52,385 nt of DNA, from positions 2,534,552-2,586,936 of the forward strand of contig BFEA01000031.1 of the NCBI GenBank assembly GCA_003427395.1, written 5' to 3'. Below the pieces are notes generated by a model. The model was not told where the DNA came from. It worked only from the letters and a program-made list of their open reading frames with translations, and made no database searches. Made by a program: the position numbers and the translations under genes. Source of the DNA: Chara braunii (Eukaryota; Plantae; Charophyceae). The stretch's first letter is position 1. The number at the start of each line of letters is the position of its first letter. Positions 9,386-51,969 of this stretch are shown here, piece after piece.

Positions 9386-9487
9386 AATTTGGACCATTTC
9401 TCGATTTCTGCGTGTCATCCTTGCGCAGGGGCCATGCTAATCTTCCTTCTCTGTATCGTTCCAATTTTAACGGATGTCCCGAAGGAC
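9386..9487 (-). pseudogene. U6: Near full-length U6 snRNA variant with a 4-nt insertion after the ACAGAGA box, inside the CSLD intron (sense to the host gene)
   Basis: The reverse complement reads GTCCTTCGGGACATCCGTTAAAATTGGAACGATACAGAGAAGGAAGATTAGCATGGCCCCTGCGCAAGGATGACACGCAGAAATCGAGAAATGGTCCAAATT, with T14 upstream and an A-rich tract downstream on the U6 strand. Confidence 0.88.
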
Positions 9488-10130
9488 ATTGACAAAAAAA
9501 AAAAAAACACAAAGGAAAACAAAGAACGCTTGATCTCAAGCATCCCTTACAGCAGCATTTCCCAGTGGTCCTAGCACTGAGATGGAGACGGAAAAAAGCC
9601 TCAACCTAGACGTGCGGTGGCTGAGGAAGCACAAGCAACTGTGCTGATGTGCACTTGAGGGAACAAGCAACAAAGTGCAAGAAGGCAGGGAGGAGCACTA
9701 CAAAGCGTATAGAGTACAGGCCATGAGACCAACGCATTGGCAGAGCGATTGAGGGTCCGTCCAGAGAAGGTCGGCGTGAAGCAACATGCAAGAACAGACT
9801 ACACTGCCACATTCAATCCGTTCGGAAAGTGATTTAGCAGTTAGTGTCCATCTGAAGGCACTTCCTTACCTAGATCGTAGTATACTGGTACTTCAATTCC
9901 GTTGGGGGAGTTGGTAGTGGTGTTCGTCCCAAAGGCACTTGGTGTTTTTTTTTTTTTTTTCTCTAATTTCCAAAAGGCACTTGGTAATTACCTCTGTTTG
10001 TCCGTTTTTTTTTGTTTTTGTTTTAAGACTTACTGGATTTCATCATCTAGTTCCATCTGGAGTCGAACGCAGGCCTTTATTTCAACAGTCCATGTGTGTA
10101 CCGACTGAGCTAGGCTTGTTGGTTACTTAC

Positions 10131-12113
10131 CTTTGTATCTCCATCGGGCTGAAGGAAGACCTGAATCATCCCCACATGGTCATTTCTGACATTTCCAGGC
10201 CACGGTGAGCCGTCCGCCATTTTCCATCCATCGGGGGGCACATTCTTCGACTTCTCTACAAGCGCATTGATCCTGACCTTGAACTCGTCATAGGCACGCT
10301 TCATGTGTCTTCTTTCCTTGATGAAATCTGGCTGCGTCTTCCCCTTCGTGTAATCTATTTTCTGTTGAAAGTACACCTCTGGCGCTCTCGGCTCTATGTC
10401 ATACTTCTTACAGAATGGAACCCAGGCTCGCGCAAAGCTTGCTGTCTCTGTCAGCGTCTCAAATGTCAGCATGGCCGCACCATCGTCTGACAGGTAACAG
10501 GCAAGCTTGTCCACAGGGTAATCCATGGCCAGAACGGAGAGGACCACATTGGCCGTCACCAAAGGAGGCTCCTTTTCAGGGTCCGCTGTCGATACGAAGA
10601 CATCTACAGGTAGCAGCTTGTTTGGTTCCCCCTCTTTCTCATACTTCAGACTTAGCCGGTCCAGGTACGTCTCTCGAGTGATCGGCGACCATTTTGGAAC
10701 CTGGTCCAGCACCCAGCTGATCCCAAACCAGATTTCGCACGATACGGATGCCAACCAGAGAACATAGGCATCCGGGTTGGGAGTCTGAATCCGGTAGTGG
10801 AGGAAGAAGGCAAGGGTGATGAAGCGCACAACAACCATGAACCTGTACGGATTGATGAGAGCGGCAGCGACGGGGATGACTCTGGACAACGGTCGTTTGG
10901 TGTCGTCAACAAGAATGGGCTTTTGATGACAATGCTTTCCGGCCGCCTCGGCTGCATGAGCATCACCACCACCACCATCACCACCTCCCCCACCACCACC
11001 TTTGCCGCCTTTCGCAGACTCTATCCAGTGAATGCTGCCATAACCATAGTCAAGCATGGTTTTATTAGGATCTAGCGTCTGAAAGGAGAGGAGGACTTTG
11101 GCAAGAGAGTCCGGCATCAATGGGGAAGCACTTATACTCAGCGGAACAACAGTCATATCACCACGTAGAGCAGACTCTTCCTCCTGCCCTTCCTCCCGTT
11201 GTCCCTGTCCCACTTCTTCTCCCTCCTCCTCTTCTTCCTCCTCTTCCTGCTCATTGGAAGCACAAAGTTTACGGTGACGTGGGGCTGTTGATCTCCCTAT
11301 GGCTCCCAGTGACTTCAACGACTCTGGTTCTGAAACATATGCATCTTGTACGTTAGAGCTGATAGAGACAGGGCTGCCAACCTGCAACGGTCTCCGGAGA
11401 CCGCTGGCAGTCTGTGTCCGCTTTTCATTGGCTCCACTGACGTTGTTGTCCTCACCAGCCAAGGAAGAGGAGTAAGTTTGGTGTCCATCTCCCATACCAC
11501 CACCCCTACCAACACAACGACCTGCTCTCTGTGGCTTCAACTTTCTGTATGGCTCCTGGCACTGGGGGCAGCGCCCACCCTCATGCTCTCGAACGTACTC
11601 ATAACAAGGCTTGCAGATGATAAAAGCACACTCGCAAGGGACAAACGGCTCCCCTTCCTCGTCTCTCCCAACACGTTCCCTACAGATAGAACATTTCACC
11701 TCCTTCCGTTCGCAACTTAGCCCTCCGCCGCCGCCGTACAGGCTCTCGTCGGCGCCCGGCGACTCGGCCACCGCCAACTGGTTCTTACTGCGACTGCCCA
11801 GGACGATCATGTTCTCCATACTAAGAGCTCGCAAGTGAGCACCATCCTCATCGCCATCGCCATCGCCATCAAAGCTCTCACCGAGGGAGGATGAAGATTG
11901 GGTGGTCACATGGCATGCCCTCCATCGACTAAATTCCCTGCTGCTTGGACCCTCCATGCTCATGTCTGGTGATTCAAAGGGGGCACCACCAGAACAAGGA
12001 GATGCTCCCATAGACAGAGCCTTCTTGGACTGTTTCTCCCTCTTTACAGCTCGCGGGGTGCTGTCCATTGTCCACCCTGGAGGAAGTGGCAATGGATTCT
12101 CTTCACTCATCAT
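10131..12113 (-). CDS. CSLD: Cellulose synthase-like D (CSLD/CESA superfamily, GT2), coding exon 1 (661 codons)
   Basis: The ORF has an N-terminal RING-type Zn finger (CSIC...[12 protein letters not shown]...CPQC), [13 protein letters not shown]...INPYR, TM1-2, [25 protein letters not shown] and the P-CR ([21 protein letters not shown]). It ends at a canonical donor AAG|GTAAGT at 10131/10130. The first ATG is at 12113, just after a polypyrimidine-CAG acceptor at 12122. Confidence 0.93.
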
Positions 12114-12384
12114 TACACACGCTGGATAAAAGAAAGAAAGCCACAAAGGAAAAGACACAGTCGGTGCATTAAAACAAAGTTCTAAGTTTTTAATCCTATG
12201 CCTTGACAGTTCCGCATAAGTTTTTAGAAGCTGTCCATGGGGAATAAGTCTTCCAAAAAAAAACAAGGAAAAGTCAGTGCTTTACTGGTTGGGTGAGGTG
12301 GGTAAGAGGGGGAACAACAAAAAAACAGTTATGTTTTTACAAGCAGCACGAACACTACACTGCCTACCAGTGGCAACACCAACA

Positions 12385-12605
12385 ACCAGGAGTACAATAA
12401 CGACAACCAGGGGTACAATAGCGACAACCAGGAGTACAATAACGACAACCAGGGGTACAATAGCGACAACCACGTGTACAATAGCAACAACCACGGGTAC
12501 AATAGCGACAACCAGGGGTACAATAGCGACAACCAGGGGTACAATAGCGACAACCAGGGGTACAATAACGACAACCAGGGGTACAATAGCGACAACCAGG
12601 AGTAA
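12385..12605. repeat. 21-bp minisatellite (CCAGGGGTACAATAGCGACAA), ~10 copies
   Basis: Direct tandem copies; these produce the spurious repetitive ORFs in several frames. Confidence 0.9.
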
Positions 12606-50453: not shown

Positions 50454-51414
50454 NNNNNNNNNNNNNNNNNNNNNNNNNNNNNNNNNNNNNNNNNNNNNNN
50501 NNNNNNNNNNNNNNNNNNNNNNNNNNNNNNNNNNNNNNNNNNNNNNNNNNNNNNNNNNNNNNNNNNNNNNNNNNNNNNNNNNNNNNNNNNNNNNNNNNNN
50601 NNNNNNNNNNNNNNNNNNNNNNNNNNNNNNNNNNNNNNNNNNNNNNNNNNNNNNNNNNNNNNNNNNNNNNNNNNNNNNNNNNNNNNNNNNNNNNNNNNNN
50701 NNNNNNNNNNNNNNNNNNNNNNNNNNNNNNNNNNNNNNNNNNNNNNNNNNNNNNNNNNNNNNNNNNNNNNNNNNNNNNNNNNNNNNNNNNNNNNNNNNNN
50801 NNNNNNNNNNNNNNNNNNNNNNNNNNNNNNNNNNNNNNNNNNNNNNNNNNNNNNNNNNNNNNNNNNNNNNNNNNNNNNNNNNNNNNNNNNNNNNNNNNNN
50901 NNNNNNNNNNNNNNNNNNNNNNNNNNNNNNNNNNNNNNNNNNNNNNNNNNNNNNNNNNNNNNNNNNNNNNNNNNNNNNNNNNNNNNNNNNNNNNNNNNNN
51001 NNNNNNNNNNNNNNNNNNNNNNNNNNNNNNNNNNNNNNNNNNNNNNNNNNNNNNNNNNNNNNNNNNNNNNNNNNNNNNNNNNNNNNNNNNNNNNNNNNNN
51101 NNNNNNNNNNNNNNNNNNNNNNNNNNNNNNNNNNNNGTGCTTGGAGTGACTCAGTTAGTATCCAACAAATTTCTTTTTCTTTTTCTTTTTCTTTTTTTCT
51201 TTTTTCTTTCCTTGGTATGAGCACACCTAGAAAAAAGTTCGCCGGTAGCAGAGGGACCGAGCATCGTCTGAGTGGTCAGTCGCTGTGACTCCCTGAGTAC
51301 CCCTCCCCCTATGAACATCAGCAGAGACTGCTTTTTAATGCCAATTGGGGGGACCAACGGACTATCTCTAGGTGGCGGGCGCCAAGCATGCCCAGGAAGG
51401 TACATGAGGCCAAT

Positions 51415-51502
51415 GGGGATTGAACCCAAGACCTCCTTAGGCCAACCAATCCAGGTAAATTCAATCTTGTGTCCAATCTGACAACGGTGGACTCTTCAGC
51501 CC
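51415..51502 (-). mobile_element. Degenerate tRNA-like head
   Basis: The minus strand ends GGAGGTCTTGGGTTCAATCCCCA (T-arm/B box); the A box is weak. Confidence 0.35.
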
Positions 51503-51918
51503 AGGGTGGCCTGATAGCCTTAGGGTGGCCTGATAGCCTTCAGTGATCCCCCACTGGGGGGGCCCCGGTGCTACTGGAACGGGCCACAGTAGCATGTGGT
51601 AGGGCCAAGTTCTAAGAAGTTGCATTCACTAGATGAATCTCCTCTGGAATATGGCGTGATACAGCACCACATGGAGCCATAGCGATAGGGGAGCTCTCTC
51701 CTCGTTGCCACGAGAATCGGGGGAAGAGAATCTAACAACTAAAGAAGAAAAAAAAAAAAAAAAAAGGAAAAAAAAAGAAAGAATATACCTAAAATAGTTA
51801 CAGGTTGCCCGTAGAAACGGGCGCCTGTCACGAACTCTGAGAGTTGCAACTTCCAGCTTCTCAAGTAAGGGCCATGTGGCGCCGCTTTTTTTTTTCTTCC
51901 TTTTTAATCTCCCTTTTA

Positions 51919-51969
51919 GGAACCTTTCTCAATTTATGCGTGTCATCTTTGTGCTGGGGCCGTGCTCAT
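51919..51969 (-). pseudogene. U6: Diverged U6 3'-half fragment
   Basis: The minus strand reads ATGAGCACGGCCCCAGCACAAAGATGACACGCATAAATTGAGAAAGGTTCC, followed by A-rich sequence. Confidence 0.68.

What the first reader, a model, noticed from the sequence alone, without database searches (positions are those of the whole stretch)
9386..51969. U6 snRNA apparently behaving as a mobile element: at least nine U6-derived segments in 52 kb
Seen: near full-length copies at 9386, 13342 and 38090; partial or deleted copies at 22384, 24060, 43247 and 51919; short pieces at 13001, 13229 and 43520. They lie on both strands, most have A-rich 3' tracts, none has a land-plant USE/TATA upstream, and their divergence is graded. 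Known: LINE machinery retroposes U6 in mammals, and snRNA-derived SINEs (SINEU, from U1/U2) exist in crocodilians. Inference: roughly one copy per 6 kb is far beyond sporadic pseudogene formation. It points to a high-copy U6-derived SINE-like family, amplified in several waves, possibly by the L1-type LINEs whose remnants occur here.
Basis: partly seen in the sequence, partly recalled or inferred. Interest (0 to 1): 0.85.

Follow-up and report, generated by a model that had tools for sequence, protein, structure and literature searches.

The report
Retroposed U6 snRNA copies in Chara
This 52 kb stretch of the stonewort alga Chara braunii holds at least ten dead, reverse-transcribed copies of the splicing RNA U6, inserted one at a time in the way LINE elements insert; U6 is copied back into this genome far more often than in humans, but nothing yet shows that the copies themselves can jump.

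Summary
Rfam finds four U6 matches above its gathering score and two below it. Local alignment adds an internally deleted copy, a 70%-identical full-length relic and several older pieces, on both strands. No copy lies within 740 bases of an assembly gap.

The copies share no flanks. The three full-length ones start exactly at U6 nucleotide 1. Most end in A-rich tails, and four have target-site duplications of 18-25 bases. There is no land-plant USE motif. They are processed pseudogenes made by target-primed reverse transcription, as in mammals.

The window is Chara braunii: it holds cellulose synthase gene CBR_g31707. Ten other loci, chosen before scanning (225 kb read), gave three more U6 matches. 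That is about 13 per Mb, or roughly 5,000-70,000 copies genome-wide. So the window is an expected upper tail, not a special hot spot.

A subfamily with a 4-nt duplication in the catalytic core occurs at four loci on three contigs. This supports variant source genes but does not prove a SINE. I found no LINE remnants here.

The scan had already noted dense U6 copies on other DNA of this genome.

The parts
13342..13442 (+). U6 copy B: full length, about 99% like the inferred consensus, starts at nucleotide 1. The U-tract is trimmed to one T, then an A-rich tail of about 20 nt to 13459.
   Evidence: Rfam 97.2 bits; alignment
13319..13340 (+). 5' half of the target-site duplication of copy B (A-run followed by CAGCTGC). 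It lies in the A-tail of the older relic B2.
   Evidence: 22-nt direct repeat, 20 of 22 identical, score 17 against a shuffle maximum of 15
13460..13481 (+). 3' half of the target-site duplication of copy B
13229..13307 (+). Copy B2: old full-length U6 relic about 70% identical, followed by an A-rich tail that became the target of copy B
   Evidence: Local alignment score 62; none of 626 null pieces reaches it
13001..13036 (+). Copy B0: possible 3'-end fragment of U6 with a retained T-tract and A12. Weak.
   Evidence: 20-nt match with one gap; not significant alone
9383..9487 (-). U6 copy A: full length, starts at nucleotide 1, with the 4-nt duplication in the catalytic core and G at nucleotide 77. 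It lies in an intron of the cellulose synthase gene, in the gene's sense. The A-rich tail runs 9356-9386.
   Evidence: Rfam 90.2 bits
9488..9545 (-). 58 nt of extra sequence between the 5' duplication and nucleotide 1 of copy A, including T14 (9494-9507 on the + strand as A14). Origin unexplained.
9546..9566 (-). 5' half of the candidate target-site duplication of copy A. The 3' half is 9335-9355; 18 of 21 identical.
   Evidence: Score 13.5 against a shuffle maximum of 11.5
38087..38190 (-). U6 copy C: full length, starts at nucleotide 1, with the same 4-nt duplication and G77 as copy A. It is inserted in a 25-bp tandem repeat.
   Evidence: Rfam 76 bits
38191..38205 (-). T15 directly 5' of copy C (4 T belong to the target repeat unit, about 11 are extra)
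38072..38089 (-). A18 tail of copy C. It merges with the A5 of the target repeat unit, which implies a duplication of about 15 nt of the repeat unit.
22384..22429 (-). U6 copy D: 5'-truncated with an internal deletion (about nucleotides 18-58), A-rich tail 22352-22383, candidate duplication 22433-22450 and 22334-22351 (15 of 18 identical)
24051..24111 (+). U6 copy E: old, 5'-truncated near nucleotide 40. It keeps a T-tract and has no A-tail or clear duplication.
   Evidence: Rfam 33.5 bits, E 1e-4
43236..43307 (-). U6 copy F: nucleotides 34-90, truncated at both ends, followed by an A-rich tract
   Evidence: Rfam 51 bits
43514..43535 (+). Piece H: 22-nt U6 core fragment, inverted relative to F and about 210 bp away. 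Borderline.
51902..52022 (-). U6 copy G: old near-full-length copy (about 78% identical) with a 19-nt 5' leader ending CCGTAGGATT and an A-rich tail. It lies between duplication halves 52023-52046 and 51877-51901.
   Evidence: Rfam 26.6 bits; duplication score 13.5 against a shuffle maximum of 9; leader
20390..20615 (+). Two very degraded U6-like pieces (20390-20453 and 20563-20615)
   Evidence: Local alignment scores 50 and 48 against a null mean of 19, sd 4
14200..14386 (+). Comparator: a tRNA-derived SINE copy that ends in T9 followed by an A-rich tail, flanked by an 11-nt duplication (14189-14199 and 14387-14397). This is the same 'polyadenylated Pol III transcript' anatomy as the U6 copies.

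Best explanation
These are processed pseudogenes (retrocopies) of U6 snRNA in Chara braunii.

Proposed mechanism:
1. U6-type RNA polymerase III transcripts start at the normal nucleotide 1, and their 3' U-tract is trimmed to 0-2 U.
2. They acquire an A-tail. This happens either by nuclear polyadenylation or because a reverse transcriptase jumps from the poly(A) of its own template onto the U6 3' end.
3. A poly(A)-dependent, L1-like LINE machinery copies them into DNA in trans by target-primed reverse transcription at T/A-rich nick sites. This leaves target-site duplications of 18-25 bases that begin in an A-run.
4. The copies lack the external U6 promoter, so they are dead on arrival and decay. 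The process has run for a long time, since identities range from 99% to about 70%.
5. The A-tails of resident copies offer new nick sites, which produces nested clusters. Copy B sits in the tail of relic B2.

At least two or three source variants fed the process. One carries a 4-nt duplication between the ACAGAGA box and the AGC triad.

Shown:
- U6 identity and exact 5' ends
- A-tails and duplications
- unrelated flanks
- shared variant characters
- presence at other loci

Inferred:
- the identity of the LINE
- how the A-tail arises
- that the sources are promoter-bearing genes
For: - U6 identity.
- Exact starts at nucleotide 1 for copies A, B and C, with the U-tract trimmed before the A-tail.
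- Duplications for B, G, A and D, and an insertion inside a tandem repeat for C.
- Similarity between copies ends within about 20 nt of U6, in T- or A-runs.
- No land-plant USE motif within one mismatch anywhere in the window.
- 5'-truncated and internally deleted copies (D, E, F), as expected of reverse transcription.
- A tRNA-derived SINE in the same window has the same T-run, A-tail and duplication anatomy.
- The window is Chara braunii CBR_g31707.
- Ten other loci chosen before scanning hold three U6 matches above Rfam's score and at least two below it. They also hold one LSU rRNA fragment and one tRNA match.
- That is 13 per Mb (2.7-39).
- Mammalian precedent for A-tailed, duplication-flanked U6 copies: PMC4476161.
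- Plant L1-clade LINEs recognise poly(A): PMC3472496, abstract.
Against: - I identified no LINE reverse transcriptase or endonuclease in the window or in the fetched loci (gene lists).
- Copies A and C carry an unexplained oligo-T directly 5' of U6.
- Copies E and F have no convincing duplication.
- Copy G, and one copy elsewhere (L001 3230-3339), carry a shared 5' leader, and that one sits inside a tRNA-derived SINE. So some copies derive from a composite transcript, not from plain U6.
- The shared 4-nt duplication fits a master-copy (SINE-like) lineage as well as it fits a variant gene.
- Genome-wide numbers rest on three hits in 225 kb.
Confidence: 0.72

Rival explanations
1. A true U6-derived SINE. 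Under this reading a lineage of U6-like elements, marked by the 4-nt core duplication and later by G77, has copies or a few master copies that are themselves transcribed and spawn new copies. It would be a non-autonomous retroposon rather than a by-product of U6 genes.
For: - The 4-nt duplication is present in A and C (window), L010 263-368 and the split copy L001 13593-13650 / 13806-13855, that is four loci on three contigs.
- G77 is shared by A, C and the L001 copy but not by L010, which gives a nested pattern.
- A duplication in that spacer probably disables splicing function (my inference), so the source looks like a non-functional RNA kept only as a template.
- A and C both have a 5' oligo-T.
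- Density is comparable to a real tRNA-derived SINE in the same sample.
Against: - No internal promoter has been reported for snRNA genes (PMC4494074).
- The copies have no body or LINE-derived tail.
- A and C start exactly at nucleotide 1, as products of an external type-3 promoter would.
- The 5' oligo-T differs between A and C: T14 plus a 6-nt spacer in A, T15 abutting U6 in C.
- One evolving variant gene explains the nested characters equally well.
- A 4-nt tandem duplication could recur by reverse-transcriptase slippage.
Confidence: 0.17
2. U6 is mostly a passenger. Under this reading the copies spread as part of larger mobile units, a tRNA-derived SINE with U6 before its terminator or LTRs that captured U6. 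The bare copies would then be 5'-truncated products of those units.
For: - L001 3215-3500 shows a SINE body, a GTAGGTT linker, U6 nucleotides 1-95, the SINE's last ~10 nt and then T24.
- Window copy G has the same leader, CCGTAGGATT, before U6.
- Unchecked scan notes report tRNA-SINE/U6 coupling and LTR-borne U6 elsewhere in the genome.
Against: - A, B and C begin exactly at nucleotide 1. Random 5' truncation of a longer RNA would not give this three times.
- B's duplication abuts U6 with one extra base.
- No window copy lies in a repeat shared with another copy.
- No U6 match was found in the five LTR-rich sample loci.
Confidence: 0.08
3. An authentic U6 gene cluster, or a segmental duplication of one U6 locus.
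For: Copy B is about 99% like the inferred consensus. Three full-length copies lie within 29 kb.
Against: - Flanks are unrelated.
- Copy B ends in an A-run rather than a T terminator and is flanked by a 22-nt duplication.
- There is no USE motif.
- The copies lie on both strands, in an intron and in a tandem repeat.
Confidence: 0.02

Closest known systems
Mammalian U6 processed pseudogenes, 'U6/poly(A)' and truncated classes (Doucet et al. 2015, PMC4476161)
   Same: - Bare U6 followed by an A-rich tract.
- Variable-length target-site duplications at T/A-rich nick sites.
- Truncated forms and loss of the external promoter.
- Trans-mobilisation by a poly(A)-recognising LINE is the accepted mechanism there.
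   Different: - The host is a streptophyte alga.
- Density is about 13 Rfam-grade copies per Mb in my sample. Human has 906 hits of at least 90% identity in the whole genome, about 0.3 per Mb, though the criteria differ.
- U6 is almost the only small RNA found here, whereas U1, U2, U4 and U5 are also abundant in human.
- There is a subfamily with a 4-nt core duplication.
- The LINE partner is not identified.
U6-L1 and other chimeric retrocopies made by template switching (human; Magnaporthe MINE chimeras, PMC2104539)
   Same: One copy outside the window (L001 3215-3500) is fused inside the 3' end of a SINE. Copy A has 58 nt of foreign sequence between its duplication and U6.
   Different: In the window U6 is followed directly by an A-tail, not by a 5'-truncated LINE or SINE 3' end.
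SINEU of crocodilians (Kojima 2015, PMC4494074)
   Same: An snRNA-derived sequence is amplified as an interspersed repeat. It is unclear how transcription is driven without an internal promoter.
   Different: - SINEU heads derive from U1 or U2 and are joined to a body and tail.
- Consensus-defined families were shown not to be sums of independent retrocopies.
- Here the unit is U6 alone, and that test has not been done.
Poly(A)-tailed tRNA-derived plant SINEs mobilised by L1-clade LINEs (PMC3472496)
   Same: A Pol III transcript with an A-tail is inserted with duplications. A real example sits in this window at 14200-14386.
   Different: Those have an internal A/B-box promoter, so their copies can be transcribed. 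U6 has none known.

Membership tests
LINE-mediated processed snRNA pseudogene | Homology confined to the transcribed region; upstream promoter absent | tested here: met
   Similarity between copies stops within about 20 nt of U6. A, B and C start at nucleotide 1. There is no USE motif within one mismatch in the window.
LINE-mediated processed snRNA pseudogene | A-rich 3' tail | tested here: met
   A, B, C, D, F and G have A-rich tails directly after a trimmed U6 3' end. E does not.
LINE-mediated processed snRNA pseudogene | Target-site duplications flanking insert plus tail | tested here: met
   - B: 22 nt
- G: 24-25 nt
- A: 21 nt
- D: 18 nt, borderline score
- C: about 15 nt of a tandem repeat unit
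- E and F: none found

LINE-mediated processed snRNA pseudogene | A matching autonomous LINE with poly(A) recognition in the same genome | tested here: inconclusive
   No LINE domains in 20 window ORFs or in the called genes of 10 loci. The genome as a whole was not searched.
SINE | Internal Pol III promoter, so that copies are themselves transcribed | not testable with these tools
   No internal promoter has been reported for snRNA genes (PMC4494074).
SINE | Composite head-body-tail structure with a LINE-related or simple-repeat tail | tested here: not met
   Window copies are U6 plus an A-tail only. One composite with a tRNA-derived SINE exists outside the window.
SINE | Subfamilies defined by shared diagnostic changes | tested here: met
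   The 4-nt duplication occurs in A, C, L010 and the split L001 copy, and G77 in three of them. C at nucleotide 77 occurs in the three oldest copies (E, B2, L003). The sample is small.
SINE | High copy number, dispersed | tested here: inconclusive
   3 Rfam-grade hits in 225 kb of other loci, about 13 per Mb (2.7-39). The extrapolation of about 5,000-70,000 copies rests on a tiny sample.
U6-LINE chimera by template switching | Full-length U6 fused at its 3' end to a 5'-truncated LINE, SINE or mRNA 3' part, within one pair of duplications | tested here: not met
   In the window U6 is followed directly by A-tails. Only L001 3215-3500 shows a fusion with a SINE end.
Authentic plant U6 gene | Upstream USE and TATA, T-run terminator, no duplication | tested here: not met
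   No USE motif. B ends in an A-run and has a 22-nt duplication. The Chara promoter itself is unknown.

The most novel reading that the evidence does not exclude
Chara braunii may harbour the first U6-derived SINE. This would be a lineage of catalytically disabled U6 variants with a 4-nt core duplication. It would propagate from master copies, and some would be driven by fusion to a tRNA-derived SINE head that supplies the missing internal Pol III promoter. It could have reached tens of thousands of copies.
Probability: 0.2. Interest if true: 0.75.

Novelty: new member of a known kind. Interest (0 to 1): 0.5.

Why it matters
- I found no paper on U6 retrocopies in Chara or other streptophyte algae. 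If the density estimate holds, this alga carries about ten times more U6 retrocopies than human in a smaller genome.
- That would point to a long-lived, very active poly(A)-dependent LINE machinery in a close algal relative of land plants, with an unusual preference for U6.
- Following Doucet et al. (PMC4476161), the copies could serve as dated markers of that activity.
- Homology-based snRNA annotation of this genome will be swamped by pseudogenes.
- The variant subfamily and the tRNA-SINE/U6 fusions make it testable whether an snRNA with an external promoter can become a SINE.

Tried and rejected
   - I worked beside them, using U6 nucleotides 1-16 and 79-96.
   - I used Rfam's own model on other loci fetched by protein look-up.
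   - I did still read the window file in local scripts to align the copies with each other and to build a null distribution.
   - I take no contig here for human.
2. Local hot spot. At the sample rate 0.67 Rfam-grade hits are expected in the window, so P(4 or more) is 0.005. That predicts about 5 such windows among the 970 scanned, so the window is an expected upper tail.
3. The 58-nt leader of copy A as the 3' trailer of a read-through U6 like copy E. The similarity is not above that of other T-rich 60-mers: 23 of 158 score as high.
4. LINE remnants. Two Pfam scans covering 20 ORFs found only the two cellulose synthase exons.
5. Land-plant USE motif: none within one mismatch.
6. Klebsormidium cellulose synthase locus as an outgroup: no hit, but 26.5 kb is too little to mean anything.
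7. The recurring CAGCTGC after A-runs near copy B as a shared 5' end of chained cDNAs. For copy B it is simply the duplication, and the rest is a CAG-rich low-complexity context.
8. Twin priming on the A-tail, or a template jump onto an oligo-U end, as the source of the 5' oligo-T of A and C. Both are plausible, but I could not test them.

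
Full report
**What is there**

Rfam's U6 model (RF00026) matches the window four times above its gathering score:
- 13342-13442 (+), 97.2 bits
- 9383-9487 (-), 90.2 bits
- 38087-38190 (-), 76 bits
- 43236-43307 (-), 51 bits

It matches twice more below that score: 24051-24111 (+) and 51911-51972 (-).

Short-word BLAST and local alignment add an internally deleted copy at 22384-22429 (-), a full-length relic about 70% identical at 13229-13307 (+), and a 22-nt core fragment at 43514-43535 (+).

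I aligned U6 to 626 copy-free 150-nt pieces of the window as a null. None reaches the scores of these copies, except the 43514 fragment (2 of 626) and the 12-nt piece at 13005 (16 of 626). The latter I count only as 'possible'. The same scan exposed two further, very degraded U6-like pieces at 20390-20453 and 20563-20615.

No other snRNA, tRNA, 5S or 7SL match reached E below 1 in the window.

**Gaps**

The three runs of N (40287-40850, 48255-49022, 50454-51136) are at least 741 bases from any U6 copy, tail or duplication. Nothing in the finding depends on continuity across them. Only the density figure is affected, since 50,367 letters are read. The last two gaps sit in a satellite with a period of about 290 bp.

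**Where it is**

The window encodes a cellulose synthase on the minus strand, with exons 3395-5194 and 10110-12266. It is 100% identical to Chara braunii CBR_g31707 on a 5.1 Mb contig. Copy A lies in the roughly 4.9 kb intron of that gene, in the gene's sense. Copy B lies upstream of the gene.

**Anatomy of the copies**

- A self-comparison of the window shows that similarity between U6 copies ends within about 20 nt of U6, in T- or A-runs. There are no shared flanks, so this is not a segmental duplication.
- The three full-length copies all begin exactly at U6 nucleotide 1. Their natural U-tract is cut back to one or two T before an A-rich tail.
- Copy B is flanked by a 22-nt direct repeat made of an A-run plus CAGCTGC (13319-13340 and 13460-13481).
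- Copy G is flanked by a 24-25-nt repeat, copy A by a 21-nt repeat, and copy D by an 18-nt repeat of borderline score.
- Copy C interrupts a 25-bp tandem repeat in a way that implies a duplication of about 15 nt.
- These duplications begin in A-runs, as expected when an L1-type endonuclease nicks T/A-rich DNA and the A-tail primes on it.
- Copies D, E and F are 5'-truncated. D also lacks about nucleotides 18-58.
- The land-plant U6 upstream element is absent from the whole window, even with one mismatch allowed.
- Copy B sits in the A-tail of the older relic B2. Old tails therefore serve as new targets, which helps explain local clustering.
- A tRNA-derived SINE at 14200-14386 has the same layout: T9, then an A-rich tail, inside an 11-nt duplication. 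The same machinery evidently handles polyadenylated Pol III transcripts in general.

**Is the window an outlier?**

Through protein look-ups I fetched four loci of cellulose synthase paralogues and six loci of gypsy reverse-transcriptase genes. I picked them by contig before any scan, and then ran Rfam's own models on them.

In 225,460 read bases there are three U6 matches above the gathering score: L001 3230-3339, L003 18857-18962 and L010 263-368. Besides these there is one LSU rRNA fragment and one tRNA match.

There are also sub-threshold U6 pieces:
- L001 13593-13650 with 13806-13855 is one copy split by 155 bp.
- L001 around 19450-19600 is an old copy with a 10-nt duplication.

That is 13 Rfam-grade copies per Mb (95% interval 2.7-39). 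Scaled to an assembly of about 1.75 Gb (a size from my own knowledge), this gives roughly 5,000-70,000 copies.

The window's four hits against 0.67 expected has P = 0.005. That predicts about five such windows among the 970 the scan has read. So the window is an expected upper tail of a dispersed, genome-wide population, not a special place.

For scale, Doucet et al. found 906 U6 hits of at least 90% identity in the whole human genome (PMC4476161), although the criteria differ.

One caveat applies. All three copies above 90% identity are in the window and none is in the sample, so the density of young copies is poorly known.

**Subfamilies**

- Copies A and C share a 4-nt tandem duplication between the ACAGAGA box and the AGC triad, and a T-to-G change at nucleotide 77.
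- The split copy in L001 has both characters. The L010 copy has the duplication only.
- The three oldest informative copies (E, B2, L003) share C at nucleotide 77.
- So the copies do not radiate as a star from one sequence. At least two or three source variants were active, with a nested order.
- This fits a variant, probably non-functional, U6 gene that kept evolving while it was transcribed. It fits a master-copy (SINE-like) lineage equally well.
- The exact starts at nucleotide 1 favour promoter-bearing sources.
- Recurrent reverse-transcriptase slippage could also create the same 4-nt duplication more than once, but it would not explain the linked G77.

**What remains unexplained**

- Copies A and C both carry an oligo-T directly 5' of U6: T14 plus a 6-nt spacer within a 58-nt extra segment in A, and T15 abutting U6 in C. 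Possible causes are priming of the second nick on the A-tail, a jump onto the oligo-U end of another Pol III transcript, or a leader inherited from a master copy. I could not discriminate between them.
- A resemblance between A's leader and the trailer of copy E is not above background for T-rich sequence.
- Copy G and the L001 3230-3339 copy share a leader ending CCGTAGG(A)TT. In L001 that leader is joined to the body of the tRNA-derived SINE, and U6 is followed by the SINE's last bases and T24. Some U6 copies therefore descend from a SINE-U6 composite. First-reader notes report such coupling at other places in this genome. They are unchecked, and I confirmed only this one case.

**Verdict**

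The best-supported reading is LINE-type retroposition in trans of A-tailed U6 transcripts. This is the kind known from mammals (PMC4476161) and in keeping with poly(A) recognition by plant L1-clade LINEs (PMC3472496). Here it occurs in a streptophyte alga at unusually high density, with U6 as almost the only small RNA involved.

There is no promoter in the copies and no SINE body. I found no LINE remnant in the window. Waves cannot be resolved from about a dozen copies.

I found no paper on U6 retrocopies in Chara. The scan had already flagged dense or variant U6 copies on other DNA of this genome.

**Limits**

- Local scripts still read the window file to align the copies with each other.
- Read depth, variant frequencies and expression are therefore untested.

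Noticed in passing
window 14200-14386 (+); partial copies 10054-10116 (-) and 35119-35199 (+); also L008 325-492, L003 16136-16280, L001 17036-17093: A tRNA-derived SINE family with A- and B-box-like head. It ends in GCCC plus a T-run, followed in the full window copy by an A-rich tail and an 11-nt target-site duplication (ATACGGTTCTT).
   Followed up: partly
L001 3215-3500 (-): A composite: body of that SINE, linker GTAGGTT, U6 nucleotides 1-95, the SINE's last ~10 nt, then T24. Window copy G (51902-52022) has the same leader before U6. This is a candidate SINE-U6 composite element with an internal Pol III promoter.
   Followed up: partly
window 9383-9487; L001 13593-13855 and about 19450-19600; L003 18857-18962: All four U6 copies that lie in introns of cellulose synthase paralogues are in the sense orientation of the host gene. 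With four of four this could be chance (about 1 in 8).
   Followed up: no
L001 13593-13650 and 13806-13855: A U6 copy of the 4-nt-duplication/G77 type is split just after the AGC triad by a 155-bp insert of unknown origin. Its 5' leader is locally duplicated.
   Followed up: no
window 7697-7767: A near-perfect AT-rich hairpin gives many sub-threshold microRNA-family matches on both strands (best 43 bits, all below gathering scores). It is probably a palindromic repeat rather than a microRNA.
   Followed up: no
window 8966-9023 (+): Weak Hammerhead_3 match (28.2 bits, gathering score 48.5, E 0.06) inside the cellulose synthase intron.
   Followed up: no
window 49199-50453: A satellite with a period of about 290 bp, about 85% identical between units, lies between two of the assembly gaps and probably caused them.
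   Followed up: no
window 31067-32938 and 45170-47123: An inverted pair of an unidentified repeat of about 2 kb, about 70% identical. Its ORFs have no Pfam match.
   Followed up: partly
L007 18686-18962 (-): An isolated fragment of large-subunit rRNA (model positions 675-954, 50.8 bits) lies in a gypsy-rich locus. Other host RNAs are therefore also copied into this genome.
   Followed up: no
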